Shown piece by piece: positions 5,101 through 26,009 of a stretch of 64,000 nucleotides of DNA. The stretch covers positions 3,286,001 to 3,350,000 of the forward strand of contig CATNEN010000030.1 in NCBI GenBank assembly GCA_950097015.1, given 5' to 3'. The stretch comes from Macrostomum hystrix (lineage: Eukaryota > Animalia > Platyhelminthes). The position numbers and the translations under genes are program-made. A model generated the notes under the pieces. It ran no database searches and had not been told where the DNA came from. It worked only from the letters and a program-made list of their open reading frames with translations. Position 1 is the stretch's first letter; each line of letters begins with the position of its first letter.

Positions 5101-8100
5101 ACTCGGATAAGCAGAATCCCATCTTTCATAGAAATCCCCACTCGGATAAGCAGAATCCCATCTTTAATAGAAATCCCCGCTCGGTTAAGCAGGATCCCAT
5201 CTTTCATGGAAATCCCCGCTCGGATAAGCAGAATCCCATCTTTCATGTGAAATGGCTCCATTTTCATGGCTCCATTTGTAGAACTATCGCTTAATCGAGC
5301 AGGCTCACAATCATTCACAAGAATTCATTCACCCAAACTGGGTCCGTAGATTCGCCCACCTGCTAGGCGAGCCGCTGCTACTCGAGTCCAGCCTGGAACG
5401 CGAGGTGCAAGCCGTGCACAGCGAATTCGAACTGGCCTGCACCAATGTCGACTCGCAGATGAACTTTTTCCACGCCTTCTTGGCCGGCCCGGAGCATCCG
5501 ATGGGCGGCTTTAAGTCCGGCAATCGCTTCACCCTCTGGGAGCGGCCGCGCGCCAACGGCATCGACGTGCGCGATCGTCTGGAGAGCTACTGGCATCGGC
5601 ACTACACGGCCGGGAATATGCGGCTGGCTGTGCAGAGCCGCATCGGCCTGGATGAACTCGAAGCCTCGGTGCGCGACTCCTTCGCCTGCCTCCAGCCTGG
5701 CCAACCGCAGCCGCGCAGTCTGGCGCCGCCTTTCGGAGCCGACTGCGACAGATTCTTCGGGCGAGTCTATAAACTCGTCCCGGCCAAGGACATGGACCGG
5801 CTGCGTCTGGCCTGGCCTGGTCCGCCTGCCCGACTGCGCGATCAGCCGCATCGCCTGCTGGCCATCTGTCTGACTCACGAAGGTCCTGGCAGCCTCCTGG
5901 ACTGCATGCGTCGGTCCGGCCTGGCCGCCGAGCTCTGGGCCGGCGTGCGCAATCGCGGCCTAAGCGACAATCAGGCGGCGTCACTCTTTGAAGTTGGCGT
6001 CCGTCTGACGCCAAGCGGCCTGCGGGTCTGGGAGAGGATCGTCCGCCTCATCTATTCCTACGTCGGCATGCTGGGCCGGCGTCTGCCAGAACTGGCCAGA
6101 ATCTACGCCGAGAGGAGGCGAATCTGGCGTACAGCATTTCGCTTTCAAGAGGAAGACGAACCGGCGGACAGCGTGGAATTCGTCAGCTGCAATATGCAAC
6201 GACTGCCGCCCGAGATGTGGCTAATGGGCGATCGAATGGTTCGCCGCTTCAATTTAGAAGCCATCGAAGATTATTGGCGCCGTCTGCGACCGCGGAATTC
6301 TTGCATACTGATCACTTCGCGTTCGTTTGTTCCGCTGTGCCATCGGGTCACTGATGGTCCGGCTGTGCGCTTTGCAGAGCATAGGTCAGTGACTCTCATG
6401 AGCTAATTGCTGTGATTTGCCACGGAATTTAGATGTTTGGGAGGGACGTCACAGTCCCGAATGGAAGCCACAGTCCCGAAAGGAAGCCACAGTCCCGAAG
6501 GAAAGCCACAGTCCCGAATGGAAGCCACAGTCCCGAAGGAAAGCCACAGTCCCGAATGGAAGCCACAGTCCCGAATGGAAGCCACAGTCCCGAATGGAAG
6601 CCACAGTCCCGAAGGAAGCCACAGTCCCGAATGGAAGCCACAGTCCCGAATGGAAGCCACAGTCCCGAATGGAAGCCACAGTCCCGAAGGAAAGCCACAG
6701 TCCCGAATGGAAGCCACAGTCCCGAAGGAAGCCACAGTCCCGAATGGAAGCCACAGTCCCGAAGGAAGCCACAGTCCCGAATGGAAGCCACAGTCCCGAA
6801 GGAAAGCCACAGTCCCGAATGGAAGCCACAGTCCCGAAGGAAGCCACAGTCCCGAATGGAAGCCACAGTCCCGAAGGAAGCCACAGTCCCGAATGGAAGC
6901 CACAGTCCCGAATGGAAGCCACAGTCCCGAAGGAAAGCCACAGTCCCGAATGGAAGCCACAGTCCCGAAGGAAAGCCACAGTCCCGAATGGAAGCCACAG
7001 TCCCGAAGGAAGCCACAGTCCCGAATGGAAGCCACAGTCCCGAAGGAAGCCACAGTCCCGAATGGAAGCCACAGTCCCGAAGGAAAGCCACAGTCCCGAA
7101 TGGAAGCCACAGTCCCGAAGGAAGCCACAGTCCCGAATGGAAGCCACAGTCCCGAAGGAAGCCACAGTCCCGAATGGAAGCCACAGTCCCGAAGGAAAGC
7201 CACAGTCCCGAATGGAAGCCACAGTCCCGAATGGAAGCCACAGTCCCGAAGGAAAGCCACAGTCCCGAATGGAAGCCACAGTCCCGAAGGAAAGCCACAG
7301 TCCCGAATGGAAGCCACAGTCCCGAATGGAAGCCACAGTCCCGAAGGAAAGCCACAGTCCCGAATGGAAGCCACATTCCTGAATTTCTGTTGTTAAAATA
7401 CTTATTAAAAATGGTATTTTTCTAATTAGCATTATAAGTGGCCTATTCAACTCCGCCCAAGGTTATTTAGGGAGTCGTTTAGCTATTCCAAGGCAGCAAG
7501 TTTTTGCTGTTCCTGTTTTCGGCAGAAAAATAAGCACATTTCAATTGCGGCTCGCTTTGCACTGTGCCACCTCGTCAGTGTAGTTAAATTAGCAACTTAG
7601 CCCTGTTAAGCAAACAGTGTGTGTACATTATAAACCTACCTATTGACTTGGGTGGGCAGTGTGAACCCAGCTCTCGTCTCGCCGTGAACTAAATGGTGCA
7701 GAACTTAGATTGAATTTCATTAAACAGCCTGCTAGCCTAGTGGAGTCTCGTTCTGTGACTGCGCAGCGCTTCGTACCACCGTATTGTTTTCCACAGCTTT
7801 TCAGGTTGAAAAACGCTAGATCATTGCTAAATTAAAAGTACGTACTAACCTGTACTATCACTACCACCATGGTAGACCCCTCTGGTGAAAGGGGACTTTC
7901 AATTCTATCAATCCCACACTCCTATCTCACAATCCCACACTCCTATCTCACAATCCCACACTCCTATCTCACAATCCCACACTCCTATCTTACAATCTCA
8001 CACTAATGTCTCACAATCCCACAATCTAATCTCACAATCCCACACTCTAATCTCACAATCCCACACTCATGTCTCACAACCCAACACTCTTATCTCATAA

Positions 8101-11100: not shown

Positions 11101-14100
11101 TCATAAATATTTTAGCTGTCGTTCGCGTCAGCATAGATTCGCCAGTTATTTGTGAGTCTCTTGAAAAGTAAGTCAAAAAGTTTTTGTGAGTTTGCTTTCT
11201 TTTTACTTCTTCTTTTTACTTCTCTGCTGTCTCTTTCTTCTCTGCCCGATTCACAGGAATCCTGATTCACAGGAATCCTGATTCACAGGAATCCCGATTC
11301 ACAGGAATCCTGATTCACAGGAATCCTGATTCATAGAAATCCTGATTCATAGAAATCCTGATTCATAGAAATCCTGATTCATAGGAATCCTGATTCACAG
11401 GAATCCTGATTCACAGGAATCCTGATTCATAGGAATCCTGATTCACAGGAATCCCGATTCACAGGAATCCCGATTCACAGGAATCCCGATTCACAGGAAT
11501 CCCGATTCACAGGAATCCCGATTCACAGGAATCGCGATTCACAGGAATCCCGATTCACAGGAATACCGATTCACAGGAATCCCGATTCATCGGAATCCCG
11601 ATTCACAGGAATCCTGATTCACAGGAATCCTGATTCACAGGAATCCCGATTCACAGGAATCCTGATTCATAGGAATCCTGATTCACAGGAATCCTGATTC
11701 ACAGGAATCCTGATTCATAGGAATCCTGATTCACAGGAATCCCGATTCACAGGAATCCTGATTCACAGGAATCCTGATTCACAGGAATCCTGATTCATAG
11801 AAATCCCAATTCACAGGAACCCCGATTCACAGGAATCCCGATTCACCGAAATCATTCCAATCCATATTTCCGAAAATTCCTACTTTCCACAAATCCCAAA
11901 TTCACCAAACACACAATTAATTTTCAGTTCCACTCTGGTTCACCTGTGGCTCTACATGTTAAACTTTCAATTGAGCAAAGAACTGTACGCTGCTATCGAA
12001 GCTAGCCTATGGTAAATCAACATTGATAACACATTATTATTCGAACGTAATAAACTTACTTAAACCTAATCTATCTTTACTACAGGTACGAAATAATTCT
12101 TGTTGAACCGTTTTCCATTCGCATCAGAATCGAAGGATTCAACGACAAATTGTTTGTAAGTGGACCTAATCTTAATTCCTAAAAACTGATATATATACAA
12201 GAATGCAATGCGACTTTGTTGCTACCTGCACTCAACTGCTCCCAGCAAATTTTATTTCCCGAATAAAGCAGTTTCTTTTCGTCGCTCATAAATAATTCAT
12301 TTTAGCAAGAAGAAATCGGCCCCATTGGTGCTGGCGCGAGTTGTTGTTGTCACTTTAATTTCTGACTCTCTTTACATGTCAATAGTAAAAAGGCTTTACC
12401 ACTACCAAAAACCCGCAGACTCTTTATTCAACCATCGTTAGAAAGTTGAGACAGTTTGGCGAACTCCTTGAACTGATGGATCAGCGGCTGAATTTCGGCT
12501 TAGCCAAAGAGGAGGTGCGCAAACTGATGGTCAACTCCTTACTGACTCCCGGTAGGCTCATCAGGTGAGTGGGTGTCAGCTTGTTCCGTACTTGCCATCA
12601 GTTAGATAAGAAACTGTCTAACCCATTTGATTGGCTGGCTTAAGTCACGTGATTCTGGTTAAATACGAGCTATGTTGAAAGAGGGATTCCCTCAAAATTG
12701 TTTCTAAATTATAATAGTTGTTTCATCCGTTGGAGTGGAAAATGTTTTCTGGACTTTCATGACGTTTGGTTAAATATTTTAGGAGATACAGAAAATCAAT
12801 TTTGTTATACCCCAGTCTTTTTTTCTGTTAATGTTTCGCATTATGGAAATTCCATGAAATTATAAATAAAGAGTAGGCTTAAAAGTTGTTGATGTATTTG
12901 TAGCAAAAAGTAAAGAAATTCTTATTATTGGAGCCTTATCTACTTTTAGCGAAAACAAACTTTGCTTTAACTCTAATATCAGTTAATGCAATGTTTTGTT
13001 TTTTTCCGGTTTTCGGCGTCAAAGTCGAATTGCGCACTCGAAAAATACATTTTGTAATCTCTGATTATAATTCTTTGTTTTTTTTAACCAAATTTTACTA
13101 GCGAAATGCGCCTCTACCTACTGGAGCGAGATCGCTACTTGCGCAACGACCAGCTCGCCTGCCTCGAGTCACTAACTTTGAAGCATGTTGGAGAATTTCA
13201 TAGACGACTGCTGTCCAGATTGTCTCTTAAAGTCTACGTGCATGGCAACTGTGGAGCTGAGGTGAGACCCTGCTCTAAGGAGTTCAAAGGCTGTGTACAG
13301 CTGTTCAGTCCATGGACTAGTGGCTGTTTAAGTCTGTGTACAGCTGTTCACTCCATGGACTAGTGGGTGTTTAAGTCTGTGTACAGCTGTTCACTCCATG
13401 GACTAGTGGGTGTTTAAGTCTGTGTACAGCTGTTCAGTCTATGTTCACGCCAAGAATTTTTTCTCACTAAGCTCAGGAGATTCGAACTTTGGCTGTCTTG
13501 TTAGCCATCTGGCAGCCACTATTTTGAAATAGAATTTTAGTCAGATGAAGTCAAGAAATATGTTATATTAATTGATTCTTCGAATTGTCTCATTCTACAT
13601 TGCAGGAAGCAAAGAACTATTTCCGTCACATTGTGTCCATTCTGGAGCCGAATTGCGAAGTAGTCAACTGTCAGGTGAGGTTTTACCCATTCTAGCTCAA
13701 TGCTTCGATTGGCCGTATCCATAAAAATTAAGGCAAATTATTCTCATATGACAAAGATTTCACTTTTTCAAAAGTAAATTATTTTTTTGAATTTTGAGAT
13801 TTATTTAAAATTCAAACGTAAATTATAGATAGGGACAAATTTTGCCTTGCAAACAAAAAATTTAAAAGAACAAAATAGTACATTCTCGCTAGTTACTACT
13901 ATATAAGTAGCGCAGTTTGAATTTCTAAGTAAAACAGGAAATTTCTATCATTAAGCTACTATTGAATATGCAAGAACAATTACAAATGAACGATTGAAAT
14001 GAGCACATGTACAGCCTTTCAAAGACACATCCGAAGGCTGCGTACAGCTGTTCAGTCCATGGACTGGGTCGATGCTACGATGCCACCCACCTTTAATTAC

Positions 14101-17100
14101 CCCAGCTAATGCTGGTACCCATTTAATAGCCGGGTGAGCTGAAGCAATGCAAAGTAAAGAGTCTTGCCAAATCACAAAAATTTTTCCTCTGTAGTCGGGA
14201 ATCGAACCCCCGACTTGGATTCGGGAATCGAACCCCCGACTTGGATTCGGGAATCGAACCCCCGACTTGGATTCGAGAATCGAACCCCCGACTTGGATTC
14301 GGGAATCGGACCCCCGACTTGGATTCGGGAATCGAACCCCCGACTTGGAGTCTTGAACTATTGAATCTTGATTAACGCAGAATCTCTATCCTAGCTCAAC
14401 ACATATCGGCTGAGGCTCAGGCCAGAGTCCCCCGCTCCCTATACCAGCCAATGAGCACAGCCATGGCAACAATGCAGCTGGGCAGGCAGACCAGCAGGCC
14501 GATGGCGGCTGAGCCGACTAGCATAGCTACGCACTGCCTCTGCTCGCCAATCTGGGCTAGAAAGCTGGCCAGAATGAAGGCCAGGCCGATGGCCAAGACC
14601 AGCACGTGGGCGGCGCAGGCGGCCAGCTGTAGACGGGCGTTGAGAAACAGGCGGCCGCTCAGGCAGCTGATGCTGACGCTGAGGCCGGCTACTAGAATGC
14701 TGCTAGCGCAGGCCGCGAAGCCGAGACCTGCGCGTCAAGATTTAGGGGGGTTTTCTTTGACAGATTGCTAGTCCACCTGGCTGGATAATGCTGGGAGATT
14801 AGGCACTGATTAGTCCTCTGGCAAGCAAGCGCACCGCCATCGGAAGCCTTATTATCTGTCCCTGCCCGGCCAGACATTCTCATCCGAATCATGAGCTGTT
14901 TCTTGCTTTGATTCTCATTTCCGAAATGTGCCGTTTAGATATATTATAGTTGGAACTGTTGGGCCATTTTGGACCGCATGTACAACCAGTTTGGCGCTTC
15001 CAAAGGCTGTGTACAGTCCATGGACTGGGAGGCATGATACACACTTTACAGCTGGGTGAACCTAAGGCTATGCCAAATTGCGAGTCTTGTCCACGGACAC
15101 AAACAGTTTTTAACTCCTGGCCTGTCTTAGTTAATCTAGTTAGTTAGTTTTCTCTTAAAAATGTTCCATTATTTAAATAATTGATCTAATAATTTTTTTT
15201 ATAATAATAATTTGATTACACCTGCCCCAATTGGGCCAGATGTGCAGCCGACAGCACAGCCGCAGCTATTGCGCGGCGCATCTGAAGGCTGCGTACAGCT
15301 GTTCAGTCCATGGACTGGGGGGACGCCACACCCACCTTCAATTATCCCAGCTGATGCTGGTACCCATTTAACAGCTGGGTGAACTGAAGCAATGCAGAGT
15401 TAAGTGTCTTGCTAAAGGACGCAAATTGTTCCAGTGGAGTCGGGAATCGAACCCCCGACCTTCAAGTTGTGAGTCCGATGCCCTAACCACTAGGCTACAA
15501 CCTCATTATTTAAATGAAAAATATTAGTAAAGGCTTTAGCTATAAGCACTAGCAAATAAAGGGGGGATAAATAAACTAATTTCAGAGTTGTTCAGACAGC
15601 CTGATTGTCAGATGTGCAAATACAGCATATACTGTACAATCCCGCATCAGCCTTCTATCATATCTAGCAGGGGTGATCAGAATTACCAGCCTGTGCTATG
15701 CTGGGATCTTTATAAGAAGCAATCAAAAAACAAATTAGCACTAAAACTATGAGGAAATGGAAGATTGGATTACATTGGATTAATCAGCTTATTTTTGTAA
15801 TACACTTCAATCCATTTTAGTTTAATGAAAAAAAGAAAAAGTAGAAGACCGGTGAAATCAATATATTGAACTCATAATGAATAGAAATGTGTGGTGTGTG
15901 TGCAGTGTTGCTTGGCCAATTAATGAAGCAACTGAACCAAATTAGAGTTAATAGGATTTGCTCTGTTTTTTTCTCTACCGGTTTGAAACCAAGCGCGAAG
16001 GACTATAATCCGTTCCCGAGTCTCATTTCTCTGTGGAGCATTGAGTATAACACAATTGTGTCTGTCCTGAGAGCGAATTTATCGAACTTCGGACCGTCAC
16101 GCTTTTGATTTCTTTACTAAATTACTGCAGCTCGAAATTCGAAACTCGAAACTCGCTTCGAAACTCGAATTTCTGGACTGATTCGATTTTTTATCCTTTT
16201 TTTCGAGGATAAAACTTATTAAATGAATCCTGTACCTGTGTGTGTGTGTGTGTGCGCGGTCCATTGAGCATGTGCTCAGCGGTCAGTGAAATATTCAGAA
16301 CTGTCCAGATTACGAGCTATAATACCTGCATATAGTCCAGATATATAAAACTGAACACCTATCCTCAGCTAATGCTGGTAATAATTTAACAGATGGGTGA
16401 TCTTAATCAACGCATAGTTAATTGTCTTGCTATCGGTCACAAATTGTTCCAGTAAAGTCTGGAATCGAACCTCCGACCTTCAAATTGTAATTCCTACGCT
16501 CTAACCACTAGGTTACAATTCCTCTTTATCTTATTCCTTTGAAATCAAACAAGTCCGCATGATGATTGATTTGTCATACGATCGATGCGACCCTGGCTGC
16601 ATCTCTGAGTTATTATAAAACATCTCTTTTATTCTATAAAGTCTTTCTTGTCATAATTTTTGTTGCACAAGATAAAAGAGAAAATATTACACTATATATT
16701 AATCTAAGTACTGAGCAGTTATTTATGCTTGTAAATCATTTGAGTACGTAGTAAGGCAGTTTGTGTCTCACTTTACTGCATGAAGTCAGCCCCAAGCTCA
16801 TCAAGTTAGAACTGCGAGTATATATGCAGTAGTAGCCAATTTACTAAGTCCATTTCTATTCCTCTCTTGATTCTAGCGTAGAATCTCCTTTAGTCCTAAT
16901 TTTTATAATAGTGGCCAGTCGTGCCTTACCCCCGCTTCTATTCCTTCCTGTCTCCTCATTGCCTGATACGCGCGACTCCTGATAAGAGGGTTCGGCTTGC
17001 TTGACCAAGCGAACTGCTTCAGCCTCCGCGGCACCAACCCCAAGCCGGCTTTCTCCACAATGCTGTCTTAGGAGGCGAATCTTATTAACTAGAGTGACGA

Positions 17101-20100
17101 AGTCAAAGTCCACCCTTGGTTATATACCCTCTTAGATGACGATTTTTACTCGTAGTTTCTGTTACAAGCTATGTTATGCTTTTTCATTTACTAAACTGAG
17201 CTTGTAGCAGACGCACTTCTACCTGCGTTGTCGGGAGTTCGAATCCTGTAGTTAGAGTAGACATTCGGGTGGTTTCGGGTTTCCCAACTAGGTAATTTGT
17301 GATACTATCTTAATATAAACCGTCATACTTGAGTTATTTATAATTTTAATCGGTTCTTTTGCCGTCAAAACTGTTTTATTAAAAATATCCGATCATGACT
17401 AGTAAAATAGCGGACTGACTGTCCAAAAAGTATTGACTTCAGTCGGGCAAGTGCTTCGACTAAATTTTGCAATGTACTTTTGCTGAGCTCAGTAACGTGC
17501 TTTAGCTGACGTGACGTCAGTAATGTACTTTTGCTGACGTGACGTCAGTAATGTACTTAAGCTGACGTGACTTCAGTAGTTTACTTGGCATGATGTGACG
17601 TCATTAGTGTACTTAAACTGAGGTGACGTCATTAGTGTACTTAAACTGAGGTGACGTCATTAGTGTACTTAAACTGAGGTGACGGCATTAGTGTACTTAA
17701 ACTGAGGTAACGTCAGAAGTGTACTTGGGCTGATGTGACGTCATTAGTGTACTTAAACTGTGGTGACGTCATTAGTGTACTTAAACTGAGGTGACGTCAT
17801 TAGTGTACTTAAACTGTGGTGACGTCATTAGTGTACTTAAACTGAGGTGACGTCATTAGTGTACTTAAACTGAGGTGACGTCATTAGTGTACTTAAACTG
17901 AGGTGACGTCATTAGTGTACTTAAACTGAGGTAACGTCAGAAGTGTACTTGGGCTGATGTGACGTCAGTGACGTTGGCAAAAAAATGTTGCTTCTTTTAG
18001 TATGAAGGCTAAAATCCTTTTAAATTTAACTTTTAACTTTTTATTTCACTTTAACTTCCGTGTAGGACCAACCTGTTTTGCACTCCAATAAAAAAAGCAA
18101 TATAGTGAGATGGAACACTGTCGAATGTACTTTCTCTAAATGGTTTTATAAAGTATAGTACAGGTGTAGCTTAGCATCCTATGTGGGATTTTTTATTACT
18201 GTTTCCTTTAAAAAAATCCTGGGACAGATGTTTGAGGCTACTTTTTGTTCATGCATCCGATTCATTTGAGTGCACCGCCCCATTAGCCTTTGAGTACTTG
18301 CTCTTAAGTGCCGTCTACTTTCAGTACAAGGCGAAACCGAGTTAATGTTAAACTACAGTCGCTAGGCTTAACTCGAGCGTTTAAGATGCTCGTACTGAGA
18401 GGCCTTCTTTTCATTCAGCGCTATTCAAGCTTCGTTAACGTTAAGGGAATTATTTACGCTTCAAAAACCGCAGGCTGTCTTTGATTGTATTTTCGGTTAA
18501 AATAATCCCTTTTAGTTGCATCTCCTATCTCGAAGTCTCGATTCAATGTCTTTAAATTCCTTTTTCTCAGATGCTCACAGTGAGCAGTCACCATCTCAGA
18601 TGCTCACAGTGAGCAGTCACCATCTCAGATGCTCACAGTGAGCAGTCACCATCTCAGATGCTCACAGTGAGCAGTCACCATCTCAGATGCTCACAGTGAG
18701 CAGTCACCATCTCAGATGCTCACAGTGAGCAGTCACCATCTCAGATGCTCACACTGAGCAGTCACCATCTCAGATGCTCACAGTGAGCAGTCACCATCTC
18801 AGATGCTCACAGTGAGCAGTCACCATCTCAGATGCTCACAGTGAGCAGTCACCATCTCAGATGCTCACAGTGAGCAGTCACCATCTCAGATGCTCACAGT
18901 GAGCAGTCACCATCTCAGATGCTCACAGTGAGCAGTCACCATCTCAGATGCTCACACTGAGCAGTCACCATCTCAGATGCTCACAGTGAGCAGTCACCAT
19001 CTCAGATGCTCACAGTGAGCAGTCCTAATCTCAGGTCCTCACAGTGAGCAGTCACCATCTCAGATGCTCACAGTGAGCAGTCACAATCTCAGATGCTCGC
19101 AGAGAGCAGTCCTAATCTCAGGTCCTCACAGTGAGCATTTCTTAAAAAACTAGGTTTTGTAACCTTTTTCAGTGTTTGCACGTCAAATGCAACCATGCAA
19201 CCCTAAAAGTGCAGATGGTTTGGTCGAAATTTCTTTGCAACTCAATATATTTGAACTCAGTTCTGGCACAGTGAAGCCTCTATTGATGCTTTGAAAAAAA
19301 CTATTCGCTCCGATAGAAATGCTTCTATTCTAGCTTGTATCAATTGAATTTTAGCTATTTTTGCTCAGTTTTTTTGGGGAGATTGTTTGTGCTCTGTGTC
19401 TCGTTTCGTTATTTTTTAATTATGTCAGATATTCTCTTTGAATTTTCTATTTAAAGAGCTCAGCCTATTTAATTAGAAAATTTGCTATTGCATAATTTAC
19501 AAGTACATTCGGCTGAATTGTAAGACTGCTCATACTATCCTAATCGATCAGTCAGTATGCTCATCAATGCTCATCAACCCGGACACTCATCAATGCCCCG
19601 GACACTCATCAACACACCGGACACTCATGAATGCCCCGGACACTCATCAACACACTGGACACTCATCAATGCCTAGGACACTCATACCGGACACCCCGTA
19701 CACTCATCAATGCCTAGGACACTCATTCCGGACACCCCGTACTCTCATCAATGCCTAGGACACTCATACCGGACACCCCGTACTCTCATCAATACCCTGG
19801 ACACTCATACCGGACACCCCGTACACTCATCAATGCCTAGGACACTCATACCGGACACCCCGTACACTCATCAATGCCTAGGACACTCATACCGGACACA
19901 CCGTACACTCATCAATGCCTAGGAAAATCATACCGGACACCCCGTACTCTCATCAATACCCTGGACACTCATACCGGACACCCCGTACTCTCATCAATAC
20001 CCTGGACACTCACCCCTAACGCCGGTGCAAGAGTTGGCGGCAAAGACGCCGTCAGCGGAGGCGGCCACGGCGCCGTAGAGCAGCACTCCGACGGCGCTGC

Positions 20101-23100
20101 CGGCCAGTTTTCGCTTGTCGGTCAGAACCTTGTCTTCGCGTCCGTCGCCGCCGCCGCCCCCGGCGCTAAGGCCAGTCTGCATCTTTCTGGCCGGCGCAAC
20201 GAATGGCATGGCTGCTGATCAATATTTCCGATTGGAATTAGTCTCACTGCACTTTTAGTATTGCCGTAAATGCTATTTTTTAATTCTAGCATCAAGCCAG
20301 CCAGTGCTGGTTAAATTTAAAGTAGTATCTGGGCGTGATTGGACAAATGATCCTCTGTCCAATCGCCCTGCGCCTACTGAGGCCAGACTGTTGAAAGATT
20401 TAAACAAAAATAAAACAAAAGTACTCGCCGAATCCTCGAAAATTGAATGCTAACAAATTGATGATGCATTCTATCTTTCTCCTGCTTTTTATAGGCAGTT
20501 TTTTTAATACGAGCGTAATATAAAACTCTTTTCATTCTTTTTATTCTACTTTTAAACTGATTGATCGGCTGTAGATTTCTATCCTTCTCCCTGTACCAAC
20601 TCGGATTGATTGATGAATGCCACCTCCGCCTCCGCAGAACACTTGCGCTACCCTGCCGCCCGGCCGAAACGGCCTGCGGGTTCAGAATCTCAAATCTGGC
20701 GATGTTAACAGCTCCCTGGTGGAGTACTTTCAGTTTGAATTCCCGCCTAACCTGCGCGACTATGTGCTGTCTGCCTTGCTGCTGGTGAGTATCCTCAGTT
20801 CTTGACCCACTGATTCTCAGTTCTTGACCCACTGATCCTCAGTTCTTGACCCACTGATTCTCAGTTCTTGACCCACTGATTCTCAGTTCTTGACCCACTG
20901 ATCCTCAGTTCTTGGCCCACTGATCCTCAGTTCTTGACCCACTGATTCTCAGTTCTTGACCCACTATCCCTGATCCTTAGACTTGACCCACTGATTCGTG
21001 ATCCTTGGTTTTTGACCTAGTTTTCTCAGCTTTGCGCCTATGTAGATTTTCTGTGATATCGATTCTACATCCATCTCCAATGCAATTCTAGAGGCTGAAT
21101 ATGACACGATCCAGTCATTTGTAATCCGAAGGTGCACTGGTTAAACTATATGTTGGAATTCGAGGCACATCATGGGAATATAGATGGCTAATCCTTATCC
21201 CGTGAGGATGGCCTACCTGCATTTCAGGTTTTTTTATCTGAGGATTTTACTTAGGTATACTCTCAGTCATTTTATTTGGAATGAGACGGATCGGATAACA
21301 TGTCCATGCTAATTGTACTCACTTTATTCTCGGGCTTCCATCATCTTCCAATTCCAGCCAGTACACACTATAGTTCCCATCGGGGATTTCGCCACTCAGA
21401 AGTGGCTAATTTTTTGCAGCCAGTTTTTGCAACAGGAATGCTGGTATGCTCACTGCTTTAGCAGCAGTGGGAATGGGCATCGGAGAATATTCGTGGACTA
21501 CTAGAACTTTTTAACCCTACAACTTTAACTCCTTATTTCCTCTTATGATTTTGACAGGTGTTATCCCCATTAGGTCATGTCAGGTGTTATCCCCATTCGG
21601 TCATGTCAGGTGTTATCCCCATTCGGTCATGTCAGCTGTTATCCCCATTGGATCATGTCAGGTGTTATCCCCATTGGATCATGTCAGCTGTTATCCCCAT
21701 AGGATCATGTCAGCTGTTATCCCCATTCGGTCATGTCAGCTGTTATCCCCATAGGATCATGTCAGCTGTTATCCCCATTCGGTCATGTCAGCTGTTATCC
21801 CCATTCGGTCATGTCAGCTGTTATCCCCATTAGGTCATGTCAGCTGTTATCCCCATTAGGTCATGTCAGCTGTTATCCCCATTAGGTCATGTCAGCTGTT
21901 ATCCCCATTAGACCATGTCAGCTGTTCTCCAGTCAAACCTGAAGCCCTAATTCGCCCACTCCTCTCCGCCGCCCGCCGATGGCAGCACATTATGTCGGAG
22001 CCTTGCTTCGACTATCTGCGCACCAAGCACCAGCTGGGCTACGCGGTGTTCTGCGACAGTCGACAGACCAACGGCGCCATCGGATTCATGCTGCAGGTGA
22101 GCAGCCAGGCCGACCAGTTCAGCATGGCCCAGCTGCAGGCCAGGGTGGACAAATTCACTGGGTGCCACTTTCTCAAATTGTTAGCGAACATGCCAGACGA
22201 GGTATTCGCTAACTATGCGAGATCCCTGGTGGATCTTGTGCTAGTGGAGGACGTTGGCATGACTCAGCAGGCAGATCGCTACTGGTGCGAGATACTGGAC
22301 AATGGCCCGGCCTGCCCGCCTGCCGCCTTCCGTCGGCACTACGCCGAGGCCGATCTCCTGCTGCACTCGATCACCAAGGCTGAGGCTGTGGACTTTTATC
22401 AGCGCGCACTGCGCTTCCCGGACAGGCGCTCCTTCAGCTTTCAGGTGAGGCGAACTGGATTTTTGATTGGGGAAAGGTATTTTTATTGGGGAACTGGTAT
22501 TTTGATTAGGGAACTGGTATTTTTATTGGGGAACTGGTATTTTGATTAGGGAACTGGTATTTTGATTAGGGAACTGGTATTTTTATTGGGGAACTGGTAT
22601 TTTGATTAGGGAACTGGTGTTTTGATTAGGGAACTGGTGTTTTGATTAGGGAACTGGTGTTTTGATTAGGGAACTGGTATTTTGATTAGGGAACTGGTGT
22701 TTTGATTAGGGAACTGGTATTTTGATTAGGGAACTGGTGTTTTGATTAGGGAACTGGTATTTTGATTAGGGAACTGGTGTTTTTATTGGGGAACTGGTAT
22801 TTTGATTAGGAAACTGGTATTTTGATTAGGGAACTGGTGTTTTGATTAGGGAACTGGTATTTTGATTAGGGAACTGGTATTTTTATTGGGGAACTGGTAT
22901 TTTGATTAGGAAACTGGTATTTTGATTAGGGAACTGGTATTTTGATTAGGGAACTGGTGTTTTGATTAGGGAACTGGTATTTTGATTAGGGAACTGGTGT
23001 TTTGATTAGGGAACTGGTATTTTGATTAGGGAACTGGTATTTTGATTAGGGAACTGGTGTTTTGATTAGGAAACAGGTATTTTGATTAGGGAACTGGTGT

Positions 23101-25320
23101 TTTGATTAGGGAACTGGTATTTTGATTAGGGAACTGGTATTTTGATTAGGGAACTGGTATTTTGATTAGGGAACTGGTATTTTGATTAGGGAACTGGTAT
23201 TTTGATTAGGGAACTGGTATTTTGATTAGGGAACTGGTGTTTTGATTAGGAAACAGGTATTTTGATTAGGGAACTGGTGTTTTGATTAGGGAACTGGTAT
23301 TTTGATTAGGGAACTGGTATTTTGATTAGGGAACAGGTATTTTGATTAATGAAAATTGGCATCTGATTATGATGAAACTGGCATCTGATTATGATGAAAC
23401 TGGCATCTGATTATGATGAAACTGGCATCTGGTTATGAGGAAACTGGCATCTGGTTATGAGGAAACTGGCATCTGATTATGATGAAACTGGCATCTGATT
23501 TTTATGAAACTGGCATCTGATTTTTATGAAACTGGCATCTGATTATGATGAAACTGGCATCTGATTATGATGAAACTGGCATCTGATTATGATTAAACTG
23601 GAATCTGATTATGATGAAACTGGCATCTGATTATGATTAAACTGGCATCTGATTATGATGAAACTGGCATCTGATTATGATGAAACTGGCATCTGATTAT
23701 GATGAAACTGGCATCTGGTTATGAGGAAACTGGCATCTGATTATGATGAAACTGGCATCTGATTATGATGAAACTGGCATCTGATTATGATGAAACTGGC
23801 ATCTGGTTATGAGGAAACTGGCATCTGGTTATGAGGAAACTGGCATCTGATTATGATGAAACTGGCATCTGATTTTTATGAAACTAGCATCTGATTTTTA
23901 TGAAACTGGCATCTGATTATGATGAAACTGGCATCTGATTATGATTAAACTGGAATCTGATTATGATGAAACTGGCATCTGATTATGATTAAACTGGCAT
24001 CTGATTATGATGAAACTGGCATCTGATTATGATGAAACTGGCATCTGATTATGATGAAACTGGCATCTGGTTATGAGGAAACTGGCATCTGATTATGATG
24101 AAACTGGCATCTGATTATGATGAAACTGGCATCTGATTATGATGAAACTGGCATCTGATTATGATTAAACTGGCATCTGATTATGATTAAACTGGAATCT
24201 GATTATGATGAAACTGGCATCTGGTTATGAGGAAACTGGCATCTGGTTATGAGGAAACTGGCATCTGATTATGATGAAACTGGCATCTGATTTTTATGAA
24301 ACTGGCATCTGATTTTGATGAAACTGGCATCTGATTATGATGAAACTGGCATCTGATTTTGATGAAACTGGCATCTGATTATGATTAAACTGGAATCTGA
24401 TTATGATGAAACTGGCATCTGATTATGATTAAACTGGAATCTGATTATGATGAAACTGGCATCTGGTTATGAGGAAACTGGCATCTGGTTATGAGGAAAC
24501 TGGCATCTGGTTATGAGGAAACTGGCATCTGATTATGATGAAACTGGCATCTGATTATGATGAAACTGGCATCTGATTATGATTAAACTGGCATCTGATT
24601 ATGATGAAACTGGCATCTGATTATGATGAAACTGGCATCTGATTATGATGAAACTGGCATCTGATTATGATGAAACTGGCATCTGATTATGATGAAACTG
24701 GCATCTGATTATGATGAAACTGGCATCTGATTATGATGAAACTGGCATCTGATTATGATTAAACTGGAATCTGATTATGATGAAACTGGCATCTGATTAT
24801 GATTAAACTGGCATCTGATTATGATGAAACTGGCATCTGACTGTGGAAAAGTGGTAATCTAGTTAACAAGTTCCGATTTCCACGTCCAGAGTTTTTTTCA
24901 TTCGATATTTTTTAATTAGACATTGTCCCTTTGATCTTTTGCTCAAGGTAAGATAATAATATTGACTATTATATGAGACTCGTATTCAAACTATCTAAAA
25001 ATACTAGTAAATCATCGTGCCTTAACCCTAACTCCTGCACGTGGCTGATACGCAGGTGTGTATAAATTATCACCCAAATATTAACCTATTTAAAGCATAA
25101 TATTGTTCCTAGTATCTACTGTCTATTTCAGATTGAAGGCGCCTTCAAAAAGGTGTCCTGTCGTAACGGTAAAAAAGTATTCGACCTTCCGTTGCACTAC
25201 CTGGACACCGAGCTGTCCTCGAATTCTTCAGCTGCTGTCACGGCTGACATTGTCTGGACTAGCAATCTGCGCGATTTCAAGGCCGGCTTAAAGTTCAACT
25301 TGGCCAGACCAATATTTTAA
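2115..25320 (+). CDS. NRDC: Nardilysin (N-arginine dibasic convertase), M16A/insulinase-family zinc metallopeptidase; 15 exons, about 1155 aa
   Basis: Exons with GT-AG boundaries and matching phases: 2115-2194, 3227-3581, 4119-4474, 5350-6384, 8781-8955 (in-frame alternative acceptor at 8787), 10240-10330, 11116-11167, 11928-12011, 12086-12155, 12419-12564, 13102-13261, 13606-13674, 20638-20784, 21986-22444, 25132-25320. Total 3468 nt = 1156 codons including TAA. Inverted zincin motif AHCLEHMVFMGS, downstream EREVQAVHSE, an acidic insertion after LDNGLQVLLI (nardilysin hallmark), and later family motifs KDRKFKTPR, GFNDKL, HGNC and EPCFDYLRTKHQLGY. Confidence 0.92.
3745..3900 (+). repeat. Dispersed repeat (unclassified), homologous to 55910-56430
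   Basis: GGGGAAAGACCACGA...CTGCCTACTTCACGA..AGCTC...ATTTTCCGCCCTT.ACGA..AACT.ACTTTCAAAG is shared by both loci. Confidence 0.7.
4831..5250. repeat. 39-nt minisatellite, nardilysin intron 3
   Basis: Unit GGATCCCATCTTTCATAGAAATCCCCGCTCGGATAAGCA, about 11 copies. Confidence 0.9.
6450..7377. repeat. 18/19-nt minisatellite, nardilysin intron 4
   Basis: Unit GAATGGAAGCCACAGTCCC and variants. Confidence 0.95.
7910..8645. repeat. 21-nt minisatellite, nardilysin intron 4
   Basis: Unit TCTCACAATCCCACACTCYTA. Confidence 0.95.
9301..10187. mobile_element. hAT (Charlie-like) MITE with an internal minisatellite
   Basis: TIRs CAGGGGTCGGCAAACT / AGTTTGCCGACCCTTG; 8-bp TSD ACATAGAG at 9293-9300 and 10188-10195. 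Confidence 0.88.
9383..10100. repeat. 17-19-nt purine-rich minisatellite inside the hAT MITE
   Basis: Unit GAGAGATRAGACACGGGGA. Confidence 0.9.
10491..10836 (-). mobile_element. tRNA-headed SINE family 2, full length
   Basis: Reverse complement GGGGGGTGAGTGGCAGAGCGGTTAACGCG...GAGCTCGATTCC, then body and (ATT)n tail. Homologous to 48404-48640 plus 50959-51016, and to 47404-47525. Confidence 0.75.
11250..11850. repeat. 16-nt minisatellite, nardilysin intron 7
   Basis: Unit GATTCACAGGAATCCY, with an internal GATTC/GAATC inverted repeat. Confidence 0.95.
13285..13440. repeat. About 42-nt tandem repeat derived from the SINE family 1 3' segment
   Basis: About 3.5 copies of CTGTGTACAGCTGTTCASTCCATGGACTAGTGG.TGTTTAAGT. 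Confidence 0.8.
14027..14360 (-). mobile_element. CORE-SINE family 1 copy with a tandemly amplified B-box segment
   Basis: SINE body at 14030-14190, followed by about 6 copies of the 26-nt unit CGGGAATCGAACCCCCGACTTGGATT. Confidence 0.75.
14417..20209 (-). CDS. Nested antisense gene: 168-aa small four-TM membrane protein of unknown family (MS4A/CD20-like topology, tentative)
   Basis: Exon 1 is 20209-20014 (GCC ATG, in-frame TGA upstream, donor G|GTGAGT, phase 1). Exon 2 is 14727-14417 (acceptor cctaaatcttgacgcgCAG|GT, phase 1, ends TGA). 196+311=507 nt, open throughout, GC-rich like host exons, four hydrophobic Ala/Gly/Leu/Val segments. Confidence 0.75.
15179..15504 (-). mobile_element. tRNA-headed CORE-SINE, full length (family 1)
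   Basis: Reverse complement has A box TAGCCTAGTGG, B box GGTTCGATTCC, a MIR-CORE-like body and an (ATT)n tail. TSD ATTATTTAAAT at 15168-15178 and 15505-15515. Confidence 0.85.
16295..16522 (-). mobile_element. Degenerate CORE-SINE family 1 copy
   Basis: CAGCTAATGCTGGTA...AACAGATGGGTGA...GGAATCGAACC...CTAACCACTAGGTTACAA. Confidence 0.65.
17490..17970. repeat. 28-nt minisatellite carrying 13 perfect TGACGTCA (CRE) palindromes
   Basis: Unit GAGGTGACGTCATTAGTGTACTTAAACT. Confidence 0.9.
18571..19137. repeat. 29-nt minisatellite, about 19 copies
   Basis: Unit ATGCTCACAGTGAGCAGTCACCATCTCAG. Confidence 0.95.
19555..20012. repeat. Composite minisatellite abutting the nested gene exon 1 donor
   Basis: Modules GGACACTCATCAATGCCTA and TACCGGACACCCCGTAC. 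Confidence 0.85.
20790..20990. repeat. 22-nt minisatellite directly after the exon 13 donor
   Basis: Unit TGATYCTCAGTTCTTGACCCAC. Confidence 0.9.
21555..21925. repeat. 26-nt minisatellite before the exon 14 acceptor
   Basis: Unit TGTCAGCTGTTATCCCCATTCGGTCA. Confidence 0.9.
22455..23340. repeat. 20-nt minisatellite
   Basis: Unit GGAACTGGTRTTTTGATTAG. Confidence 0.95.
23350..24840. repeat. 22-nt minisatellite
   Basis: Unit GAAACTGGCATCTGATTATGAT. Confidence 0.95.
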
Positions 25321-26009
25321 ACGGCATCCGGCGTCATAGAGATTTTATTAGTTCATAATGACTTTACAATTCGTTTGCTTGACAAGTATTTTAACAGGTT
25401 GTCAAATCGTTATAACAAGCGTTATTTTATGTGTGACTTATTTTTGTCTTTAGTTTCTCATTCATAATGTTTTTATTCACAATTTATCTTACTAACCAAA
25501 GAAAAAAGTCGTTAAAAAAGGTTTTCCTTCAGTGTCTTCTGCCTTTTTGCTAGTGTGCGTGACAACTTGCACGCATTTGTGCTTTACTTTCAATCAAGAG
25601 TGTCTAAAAATAAGAAACCTGTTTATTTTGCCGCCTCCGCCTGTACTTCAACTTTTGGCTACCTGTCTGCTAGGTTTTTTTTAGCTACATTCTAGCAAAG
25701 TTTTTTTCGCCAAGTTATCAATCTTGGGCTACATTTTTATTGCGAGTTTTTTTCTATCTATCTTTTTCCTACTTTCAATATTTTTCTTTCGATAAACAAT
25801 GCTGAATAACATAATTTTTTTTTGCTACTAATAGTAGTGCAAAAAGTAGTATCTTGGAGTTTTTTATTTGTTTTTGTACTTGTCGATAAATCTTATCTTT
25901 TACAGAAAAAGACAAATATTTTTAATGTAGCGCAGTACATGAGAAGCGAATTCTGTTATTTTGGTTGAGGCAGCATTGAAGGCGGCAATTGTGCAGTTCC
26001 AAGCTGATC

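What the first reader, a model, noticed from the sequence alone, without database searches (positions are those of the whole stretch)
14417..20209. Hidden nested antisense gene for a small four-TM protein inside nardilysin intron 12
Two GC-rich islands 5.3 kb apart join through a canonical phase-1 GT-AG intron into one 168-aa ORF: MPFVAPARK...KRKLAGSAVGVLLYGAVAASADGVFAANSCTGVRG/LGFAACASSILVAGLSVSISCLSGRLFLNARLQLAACAAHVLVLAIGLAFILASFLAQIGEQRQCVAMLVGSAAIGLLVCLPSCIVAMAVLIGWYRERGTLA. It has four hydrophobic spans, short loops and Cys in loops 1 and 3, with cytosolic-looking termini. I cannot assign a family; MS4A/CD20-like topology is a guess. It explains why this host intron is 7 kb. It may be a lineage-specific, unannotated gene.
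Basis: partly seen in the sequence, partly recalled or inferred. Interest (0 to 1): 0.75.

Follow-up and report, generated by a model that had tools for sequence, protein, structure and literature searches.

The report
Nested flatworm small membrane-protein gene
A probably real two-exon gene for a 168-residue, four-pass membrane protein lies backwards inside a 7-kb intron of a nardilysin-like protease gene of the flatworm Macrostomum hystrix. It belongs to a small gene family seen so far only in Macrostomum, and its function is unknown.

Summary
Minus-strand exons 20209-20014 and 14727-14417 join through GG|GTGAGT...CGCAG|G, phase 1, into a 168-codon ORF. Openness alone proves nothing: 44% of shuffles of exon 2 are equally open.

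The evidence is a paralogue on contig C41 of the same genome:
- both exons are conserved (55% and 42% identity)
- it has the same MPF start, the same phase-1 intron position and the same C-terminal end
- dN/dS is 0.43 (bootstrap 0.26-0.63), and the proposed frame is the only one open in both copies

Macrostomum lignano protein A0A1I8G810 is 87% identical to the C41 copy and joins both exons. The A/B duplication therefore predates the species split.

Three single-ORF loci (contigs C3, C14, C12) are probable distant members.

The genome matches M. hystrix (220 Mb, 42 contigs). The host is an M16A peptidase. Its intron is 6,963 bp here and about 176 bp in the host's paralogue, which lacks the small gene.

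Pfam, PDB, 1.8 billion protein representatives, the ESM Atlas and Foldseek find no other relative. The CD20/MS4A guess is unsupported.

"Unannotated" could not be tested, and no transcript data were reachable.

This is a real but ordinary nested orphan gene.

The parts
20014..20209 (-). Exon 1 of the nested gene (copy A): ATG at 20209, 65 codons plus the first base of Gly66. It encodes the N-terminal cytosolic tail with the DKRKL motif, TM1 with Asp53, and Cys61.
   Evidence: The paralogous exon on C41 is 55% identical, with the same MPF start and the same phase-1 donor. An in-frame TGA lies 4 codons upstream of the ATG.
14728..20013 (-). Intron of the nested gene, 5,286 bp, GT...AG, phase 1. 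It is mostly minisatellites (17506-17967, 18565-19137, 19578-20012) plus SINE-like repeats and a tRNA-like element.
   Evidence: The intron position and phase are identical in the C41 paralogue, whose intron is about 8.6 kb.
14417..14727 (-). Exon 2 of the nested gene: the last two bases of Gly66, 102 codons and the TGA stop. It encodes TM2-TM4 and the C-terminal WYRERGTLA.
   Evidence: The C41 paralogue is 42% identical over the whole exon at E 7.6e-17 genome-wide. The M. lignano protein P0001 scores E 2.9e-27 against the exon-2 profile.
20231..20365 (-). Promoter-like stretch upstream of the ATG: an ATTGG...CCAAT palindrome (20363-20338), a TTTAAATTTAA TATA-like element (about 20322-20311), a further CCAAT (20235-20231) and a TCAG acceptor-like site just before the ATG. 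This assignment is inferred, not shown.
   Evidence: Read directly from the sequence. The C41 copy also has a CCAAT about 165 bp and a CATAAAG about 95 bp upstream of its ATG, plus a CTCAG just upstream. No functional test was done.
13800..14416 (-). Putative 3' UTR. Candidate poly(A) signals are ATTAAA at 14127-14122 and AATAAA at 13805-13800. A 26-nt minisatellite lies at 14195-14349.
   Evidence: Read from the sequence. Inferred only.
13606..13674 (+). Host M16A peptidase exon immediately upstream of the hosting intron (donor CAG|GTGAGG at 13675).
   Evidence: Collinear tblastx match to the host's paralogue on C11. Splice context.
13675..20637 (+). Host intron of 6,963 bp that contains the whole nested gene.
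   Evidence: The same intron in the C11 paralogue is about 176 bp and has no copy of the small gene.
20638..20784 (+). Host M16A peptidase exon immediately downstream (acceptor CTCCGCAG|AAC, donor CTG|GTGAGT). It is 147 nt with an open frame.

Best explanation
This is an intact protein-coding gene (copy A) of the flatworm Macrostomum hystrix. It is on the minus strand, with two exons separated by a 5.3-kb phase-1 intron. It is nested antisense in a 7-kb intron of an M16A, nardilysin-like, peptidase gene.

It encodes a 168-residue integral membrane protein with four transmembrane helices and very short loops. Both ends are probably cytosolic: 11 K/R lie on the N-tail, loop 2 and C-tail side, against 2 on the loop 1 and loop 3 side.

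It belongs to a Macrostomum-restricted family:
- a clear paralogue B on contig C41, with an M. lignano orthologue, A0A1I8G810
- probably three more distant single-ORF members, C, D and E

The family signature is a juxtamembrane D-[KR]-x-K-L, an invariant Asp inside TM1, a Cys just after TM1, a Gly at the start of TM4, a Pro inside TM4 and a terminal Trp.

Shown here: the gene structure, the paralogy, purifying selection, and an origin before the hystrix/lignano split.

Inferred:
- Copy A arose by DNA-level duplication, because the intron was retained, and landed or was trapped in the host intron. The host's own paralogue and copy B lack the arrangement, so the nesting is incidental.
- The protein folds as a compact four-helix membrane bundle. 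Its buried Asp, with His in TM3 of A and B or Asp in TM3 of C, D and E, suggests a polar intramembrane contact. The most likely role is oligomerisation, or pairing with a partner membrane protein as a small auxiliary or scaffold subunit. Ion binding or conduction is the less likely alternative.

The biochemical role is untested.
For: Structure of the model:
- Exons, splice sites and frame.

Paralogue B on C41:
- Exon 1 E 2e-11 and exon 2 E 7.6e-17, genome-wide.
- Identical MPF start, GT donor after the same Arg-Gly codon split, AG acceptor, and the same C-terminal W-x-R-x-R-G-x-L-x-stop.

Selection:
- NG86 dN/dS is 0.43, with bootstrap 95% interval 0.26-0.63 and 0 of 400 replicates at or above 1.
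- Codon-position identity is 53/73/49%.
- Of the six frames, only the proposed one is stop-free in both copies, and it has the highest identity and BLOSUM score.
- Only 2% of simulated neutral copies at 0.5 substitutions per site stay open.

M. lignano relative:
- P0001 (UniRef100_A0A1I8G810) contains both exons in one product.
- It is 87% identical to B and 48% to A, so the A/B split is older than the species split.

Distant members C, D and E:
- Collinear matches to both exons.

Four helices:
- Hydropathy. AlphaFold models of members C and D show four long helices with short loops.

Host and nesting:
- Pfam Peptidase_M16, M16_C and M16_M; PDB insulin-degrading enzyme at 2e-26.
- Exon map against the C11 paralogue.

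Genome identity:
- 220,453,370 bases in 42 contigs, against '~220 Mb ... 42 contigs' for M. hystrix (PMC10468722).

Composition:
- GC3 of 0.78 matches the host exons.
Against: - No transcript evidence could be consulted, so neither transcription nor the 20014/14727 junction is shown.
- No orthologue of copy A itself was found. Only B has an outside relative, so purifying selection on A specifically is inferred from a pairwise comparison in which dS is saturated (above 1).
- The M. lignano model lacks two 12-residue stretches relative to B. The first begins exactly at the exon junction, so that public model may itself be imperfect.
- The link to members C, D and E is weak for each exon taken alone (hhalign E 4e-4 and 6e-3, probabilities 36% and 7%). 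Compositional similarity between membrane helices inflates such scores.
- The structure models are of low confidence (pLDDT 60 and 68). They are of members C and D, not of copy A.
- The functional mechanism rests only on conserved residues.
Confidence: 0.85

Rival explanations
1. Copy A is a silent or decaying duplicate. It is a once-functional paralogue trapped in the host intron that is no longer transcribed and merely has not yet acquired a disabling mutation.
For: No expression data were available. No A-type orthologue turned up in any protein search. In GC-rich sequence, open frames persist easily by chance.
Against: - The A/B split predates the hystrix-lignano divergence, since B is 87% identical to P0001 and A only 48%.
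- Even so, A keeps its start codon, both splice sites, its stop and all family-invariant residues.
- dN/dS is 0.43.
- Only about 2% of neutral simulations at 0.5 substitutions per site stay open, before counting indels.
- GC3 is 0.78, like expressed host exons.
Confidence: 0.1
2. The ORF is a chance product of two GC-rich islands (repeat or transposon debris) that happen to be joinable by a GT-AG pair. There is no gene.
For: 44% of shuffles of exon 2 give an equally long open frame. The intron and flanks are full of minisatellites and SINE-like repeats.
Against: - Both exons have exactly one paralogous counterpart each, in the same order and orientation on another contig, with the same intron position and phase.
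- The sequence is not repetitive: the genome holds only 2-3 hits for exon 2 and 2 for exon 1.
- The conservation pattern is frame-specific.
- A UniProt protein from another species joins both parts.
Confidence: 0.02
3. The family is a highly diverged branch of a known tetraspan superfamily (MS4A/CD20, MARVEL, claudin/PMP22-like or BRI3-like) and works as those proteins do. This is compatible with the gene being real.
For: - Same size class and the same four-helix arrangement with both ends inside.
- Faint leads: BRI3 at E 0.03 for P0001 and a MARVEL cluster at 0.80 in the ESM Atlas.
Against: - No Pfam family reaches threshold for any of six members or exons, and the weak hits differ from member to member.
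- A profile search of PDB sequences gives nothing at E<=10.
- Foldseek against the PDB gives nothing at E<=0.001, with best TM-score about 0.4 to GPCR fragments and designed bundles.
- ESM Atlas scores stay at or below 0.86, within the range of shuffled proteins.
- The loops are far too short for the claudin or tetraspanin extracellular domains.
Confidence: 0.12

Closest known systems
Macrostomum lignano protein A0A1I8G810 (UniRef100, 141 aa, automatic name 'G_PROTEIN_RECEP_F1_2 domain-containing protein')
   Same: It is the only public relative found. It contains the equivalents of exon 1 and exon 2 in one product, with the same MPF start, DKRKL motif, TM1 Asp, Cys, TM4 Pro and WHRDRGALT end.
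   Different: - It is the orthologue of the C41 copy (87% identity), not of the window's copy (48%).
- It lacks two 12-residue stretches. The first starts at the exon junction, so it is probably a splice-model difference.
- Its GPCR name is not borne out: no 7tm Pfam hit and only about four helices.
   Same: A small protein with four transmembrane helices, short loops and both termini cytosolic.
   Different: No sequence match at E<=10 in any member, and no PDB sequence or fold match to CD20 structures. CD20's longer second extracellular loop with its disulfide (from general knowledge) has no counterpart in the 7-residue loop 3 here.
Other antisense or same-strand nested genes recorded in this genome by this scan (for example s1-410608, s1-085021, s1-253527)
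   Same: A small, lineage-restricted gene lying wholly inside an intron of an unrelated conserved host gene of Macrostomum.
   Different: The product differs: here it is a multi-pass membrane protein rather than a secreted or SUMO-like one. Those notes report transcript support; none could be obtained here.

Membership tests
Nested (intronic, antisense) gene | The complete transcription unit's coding part lies inside a single intron of a host gene, on the opposite strand. | tested here: met
   The host exons end at 13674 and resume at 20638 on the plus strand. The nested CDS is 14417-20209 on the minus strand.
Macrostomum four-helix membrane protein family (defined here: copies A and B and M. 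lignano A0A1I8G810) | Two coding exons with a phase-1 intron after the Cys-x-x-Arg of loop 1; MPF[VI]AP start; DKRKL; Asp in TM1; W-x-R-x-R-G-x-L end. | tested here: met
Macrostomum four-helix membrane protein family, wider sense (plus single-ORF members C, D and E) | Significant, collinear similarity of both halves to the C/D/E profile. | tested here: inconclusive
   - BLASTP: 3e-6 (exon 2) and 4e-4 (exon 1) against C.
- hhalign: 3.9e-4 and 5.6e-3, with probabilities of only 36% and 7%.
- The matches are collinear and share the invariant residues D, K, L, D, C, G, P and W.
MS4A/CD20 (PF04103) | Match to the CD20 family profile at or above the gathering score. | tested here: not met
   No CD20 hit even at E<=10 for A exon 2, A exon 1, B exon 2, C, D, E or P0001.
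MS4A/CD20 (PF04103) | Fold similarity to solved CD20 structures. | tested here: inconclusive
   Foldseek of the member-D model against the PDB gave no match at E<=0.001 and no CD20 among the top 50. The model has pLDDT 68 and pTM 0.44, so a miss is weak evidence.
Class A GPCR (the automatic name of the M. lignano relative) | Seven transmembrane helices and a match to 7tm_1. | tested here: not met
   The proteins are 141-168 aa with four hydrophobic spans. There is no 7tm Pfam hit at E<=10. GPCR chains appear in Foldseek only at E 0.8-5.
BRI3 (PF10164) | Score at or above the gathering threshold of 25.9 bits. | tested here: not met
   15.3 bits, E 0.03, in P0001 only. It is absent from the scans of A, B, C, D and E.
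Host gene: M16A peptidase, nardilysin-like | Peptidase_M16 catalytic domain plus the inactive M16_C/M16_M domains, with an acidic insert ahead of the zinc-binding exon. The acidic insert is the nardilysin hallmark, from general knowledge. | tested here: met
   - Pfam: PF00675 4e-23, PF05193 5e-14, PF16187 1e-9, PF22456 1.5e-18.
- PDB: insulin-degrading enzyme at 2e-26.
- An Asp/Glu-rich ORF segment at 3234-3596 lies between the N-terminal strand and the M16 exon.
- Orthology to nardilysin rather than to insulin-degrading enzyme was not tested by a tree.

The most novel reading that the evidence does not exclude
The family founds an undescribed class of minimal four-helix membrane proteins. In this reading its invariant Asp in TM1, together with His or Asp in TM3, lines an ion pathway or cation-binding site in an oligomer, giving a very small channel or transporter unique to macrostomid flatworms. 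Alternatively, antisense transcription of copy A through 5.8 kb of the host intron tunes nardilysin expression.
Probability: 0.06. Interest if true: 0.55.

Novelty: new member of a known kind. Interest (0 to 1): 0.3.

Why it matters
- It adds a verified gene model and a small, taxonomically restricted membrane-protein family to an emerging flatworm model genus. The family has at least two members in M. hystrix, probably five.
- It corrects a misleading automatic 'GPCR' name on the only public relative.
- It gives a clean example of intron expansion: about 0.18 kb in the host's paralogue against 7 kb here, where the intron houses a gene.
- It does not open a long-standing question. Nested orphan genes appear frequently in this genome, and the protein's function remains unknown.

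Tried and rejected
Searches that found nothing or nothing useful:
- Pfam scans at E<=10 of A exon 1, A exon 2, B exon 2, C, D, E and P0001. They gave only sub-threshold, mutually inconsistent hits: BacA, DUF7670, Prominin, FTR1, BRI3, Yip1. All were rejected.
- Word-index protein searches with A exon 2, with P0001 and with the 8-row family alignment. Nothing but P0001 was found.
- The full HMMER search of 1.84 billion representatives with the exon-2 profile. It found only P0001 plus a repeat-protein false positive, P0002.
- ESM Atlas with members C and D. Best scores were 0.85-0.86, within noise.
- PDB sequence-profile search: zero hits at E<=10.
- The look-up of encoding contigs for P0001: no record.
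- ARAGORN over the region: no tRNA gene.

Structure:
- AlphaFold of C (pLDDT 60) and of the D core (pLDDT 68) gave four helices. Foldseek against the PDB gave no significant match. I ran no further search on a low-confidence bundle.

Segmental duplication:
- tblastx of the whole window against 40 kb around copy B shows that only the small gene and minisatellites are shared. The M16 paralogue lies on C11, not C41. A large duplication that would explain A and B is therefore rejected.

- The joined 168-residue model was never typed or sent to any search, family scan, cluster look-up, contig look-up or fold tool. All such calls used the exons by reference.
- The joined CDS was assembled only inside scripts, from the window and locus files, for pairwise alignment, the frame test and dN/dS.
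- A junction-spanning DNA pattern search was also left out.

The contig is flatworm, not human.


Full report
**What is in the sequence**

On the minus strand an ATG at 20209 opens a frame that runs to a donor GG|GTGAGT, so the last exon base is 20014. An acceptor GACGCGCAG|G precedes 14727, and the frame then runs to a TGA at 14419-14417. Exon 1 translates to 65 residues and exon 2 to 102 residues plus the stop. The split codon is Gly66, the intron is phase 1, and the product has 168 residues. An in-frame TGA lies four codons upstream of the ATG.

Both exons are GC-rich islands. The CDS has GC 0.66 and GC3 0.78, in surroundings of GC 0.39-0.42. The host gene's exons have GC3 of 0.69-0.83.

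**Is it more than chance?**

The open frame alone is not. With this base composition, 874 of 2000 shuffles of exon 2 keep some frame open for at least 102 codons. The decisive evidence came from the window's own genome.

Exon 2 has one strong six-frame match elsewhere, at C41:3335162-3335464 (E 7.6e-17, 42% identity over the full exon). Exon 1 has one match, at C41:3326403-3326588 (E 2e-11, 55% identity). The two lie in the same order and on the same strand, 8.6 kb apart.

Reading that locus shows:
- the same MPF[VI]APA start
- a donor (GG|GTAAGA) after the same Cys-Thr-x-Val-Arg-G
- an acceptor (CATCAG|GC) that restores the same Gly codon
- the same C-terminal end (WHRDRGALT-stop against WYRERGTLA-stop)

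Joined inside a script, the two products are 168 and 165 residues. They are 47% identical, with one 3-residue gap in the low-complexity N-tail.

NG86 dN/dS is 0.43. The bootstrap 95% interval is 0.26-0.63, and none of 400 replicates reaches 1. dS exceeds 1, so it is saturated and the true ratio is probably lower. Codon-position identity is 53/73/49%. Of the six frames of the aligned DNA, only the proposed one is free of stops in both copies, and it has the highest identity and BLOSUM score.

**A relative in another species**

A profile of exon 2 from the two copies was searched with HMMER against 1.84 billion protein representatives. One true hit came back, P0001 (E 2.9e-27). It is UniRef100_A0A1I8G810 of Macrostomum lignano, 141 aa.

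P0001 carries the equivalents of exon 1 and exon 2 in one polypeptide. It is 87% identical to the C41 copy (B) and 48% to the window's copy (A). Two things follow:
- A public gene model in a congener joins the two exons.
- The A/B duplication is older than the split between M. hystrix and M. lignano.

Copy A has therefore kept its start, splice sites, stop and frame for a long time. In a substitution-only neutral simulation at 0.5 changes per site, only 2% of copies stay open.

P0001 lacks two 12-residue stretches relative to B. The first begins exactly at the exon junction. I read this as a different acceptor choice in that model, or a real deletion. The two could not be told apart.

**Which genome**

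G000 has 220,453,370 bases in 42 contigs. Wiberg et al. 2023 report about 220 Mb in 42 contigs for Macrostomum hystrix (GCA_950097015). They also report an RNA-guided annotation of 34,543 genes, deposited as GFF3 on Zenodo (PMC10468722).

With the 87%-identical M. lignano protein, this identifies the window as M. hystrix. It is not a human contig.

**A wider family**

A weak third hit of exon 2 (C3, E 0.099) proved to be a single 221-residue ORF (member C, L003:1006-1668). It matches exon 1 (BLASTP 4e-4) and exon 2 (3e-6) collinearly.

Searching the genome with C's core found two more single-ORF members: D on C14 (229 aa, 1e-20) and E on C12 (1.6e-14; it has no ATG before the core, so it may have an upstream exon). 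A profile of A, B and C also finds D at 1.7e-6.

Profile-profile comparison of A/B with C/D/E gives E 3.9e-4 for exon 2 and 5.6e-3 for exon 1. The matches are collinear and contiguous, but the probabilities are only 36% and 7%. I treat the wider family as probable (about 0.75), not proven.

The six-sequence alignment has these invariant residues:
- D, K and L of a juxtamembrane D-[KR]-x-K-L
- an Asp inside TM1 (Asp53 of A)
- a Cys after TM1 (Cys61)
- a Gly at the start of TM4
- a Pro in TM4
- a terminal Trp

A and B have a His in TM3. C, D and E have an Asp and a Trp there.

**The protein**

Hydropathy gives four spans. By inspection of A they are:

| Segment | Residues (approx.) |
|---|---|
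| TM1 | 36-58 |
| Loop 1 | 59-66 |
| TM2 | 67-89 |
| Loop 2 | 90-97 |
| TM3 | 98-123 |
| Loop 3 | 124-130 |
| TM4 | 131-160 |
| C-terminal tail | 161-168 |

Eleven K/R lie on the N-tail, loop 2 and C-tail side, and two on the loop 1 and loop 3 side. This fits both termini being cytosolic. It rests on the positive-inside rule; no dedicated predictor was available.

AlphaFold models of members C and D, which are available by reference, show four long helices with short loops at low confidence (pLDDT 60 and 68, pTM 0.33 and 0.44).

Nothing links the family to a described one:
- Pfam gives only sub-threshold, inconsistent hits for every member.
- The PDB sequence profile gives no hit at E<=10.
- Foldseek against the PDB gives no match at E<=0.001.
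- ESM Atlas scores are at or below 0.86.
- Three word-index searches found nothing beyond P0001.

The CD20/MS4A idea is therefore a resemblance of topology only. The automatic 'G_PROTEIN_RECEP_F1_2' name of the M. lignano entry is not borne out either.

**Host gene and nesting**

Plus-strand ORF pieces carry Peptidase_M16, M16_C, M16_M and the PqqF-like C-lobe. They match insulin-degrading enzyme at 2e-26. An Asp/Glu-rich segment (3234-3596) ahead of the catalytic exon is the nardilysin hallmark, as I know it from general knowledge.

The host has a roughly 50%-identical paralogue on C11. tblastx against it maps the host exons collinearly. The exon at 13606-13674 (donor CAG|GTGAGG) is followed by the exon at 20638-20784 (acceptor CCGCAG|AAC).

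The host intron is therefore 13675-20637, 6,963 bp. The nested CDS with its own intron occupies 5,793 bp of it. The ATG is 428 bp from the host acceptor and the stop is 742 bp from the host donor.

In the C11 paralogue the same two exons are about 176 bp apart, and no copy of the small gene is present. Copy B is not inside an M16 gene. Its upstream neighbour is a leucine-rich-repeat gene, and nothing but the small gene is shared between the two regions.

A and B both keep the intron, so the duplication was DNA-based, not retroposition. The nesting looks incidental.

**Signals around the gene (read from sequence, untested)**

Upstream of the ATG lie an ATTGG...CCAAT palindrome (20363-20338), a TTTAAATTTAA element (about 20322-20311), another CCAAT (20235-20231) and a TCAG just before the ATG. 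Copy B has a CCAAT, a CATAAAG and a CTCAG in similar positions. Between 10 and 20% of M. hystrix genes are SL trans-spliced, so the acceptor-like site may matter.

Downstream of the stop are ATTAAA (14127-14122) and AATAAA (13805-13800).

**What I could not do**

No RNA-seq, no other Macrostomum genome and no annotation file are reachable. Transcription, the junction, and the presence of an A-type orthologue in relatives all remain untested.

All searches were exon by exon, by reference. The joined CDS existed only inside scripts for alignment, the frame test and dN/dS.

**Verdict**

It encodes a four-helix membrane protein of a Macrostomum-restricted, undescribed family. The CD20 guess is not supported, and 'unannotated' is undecided.

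Earlier notes of this scan record several other nested genes in this genome. This one is a solid but unsurprising example. Its most interesting loose end is the invariant intramembrane Asp.

Noticed in passing
window 15435-15504 (-); also 14002-14220, 15215-15470, 16416-16487; minisatellite 14195-14349: Rfam tRNA scores 34 bits (gathering score 29) inside the nested gene's intron, but ARAGORN calls no tRNA there. The surrounding 200-250 bp recur at several places near the C11 M16 paralogue. This looks like a tRNA-derived SINE. The 26-nt minisatellite downstream of the nested stop (unit TCGGGAATCGAACCCCCGACTTGGAT) looks like an amplified T-arm of the same element.
   Followed up: partly
L035:1331-3994 (-) = G000:C41:3327331-3329994, inside the intron of paralogue B: An 888-codon open frame carries reverse transcriptase (1.5e-28) and RNase H (5.9e-14). 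It is bracketed by two blocks of one 14/21/42-nt minisatellite about 3.39 kb apart, including a 300-nt stretch repeated at 100% identity (L035 544-843 and 3935-4234). It looks like a young retroelement with repeat-array termini. It is only described here.
   Followed up: partly
window 5405-6355 (+) versus G000:C11:5296395-5298899: One long host exon in the window's M16 gene corresponds to two exons separated by about 1.6 kb in the C11 paralogue. The hosting intron is 7 kb here and about 0.18 kb there. Intron gain, loss and size therefore differ strongly between the two old paralogues.
   Followed up: no
window 13000-26000: There are ten separate minisatellite arrays (periods 20-43 nt, up to 68 copies) in 13 kb of intron. 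Several give long spurious ORFs in many frames, so ORF length is a poor guide to genes in this genome.
   Followed up: no
P0001 (M. lignano A0A1I8G810) versus paralogue B: The public M. lignano model lacks residues equivalent to B 63-74, starting exactly at the exon junction, and B 90-101. It also carries an automatic GPCR name. It is probably a slightly mis-spliced and misnamed model.
   Followed up: partly
L027:1480-2136 (-) = G000:C12, member E: The open frame of family member E has no ATG upstream of the conserved core; the first Met is at residue 111. It may have an upstream exon or be a decaying copy.
   Followed up: no
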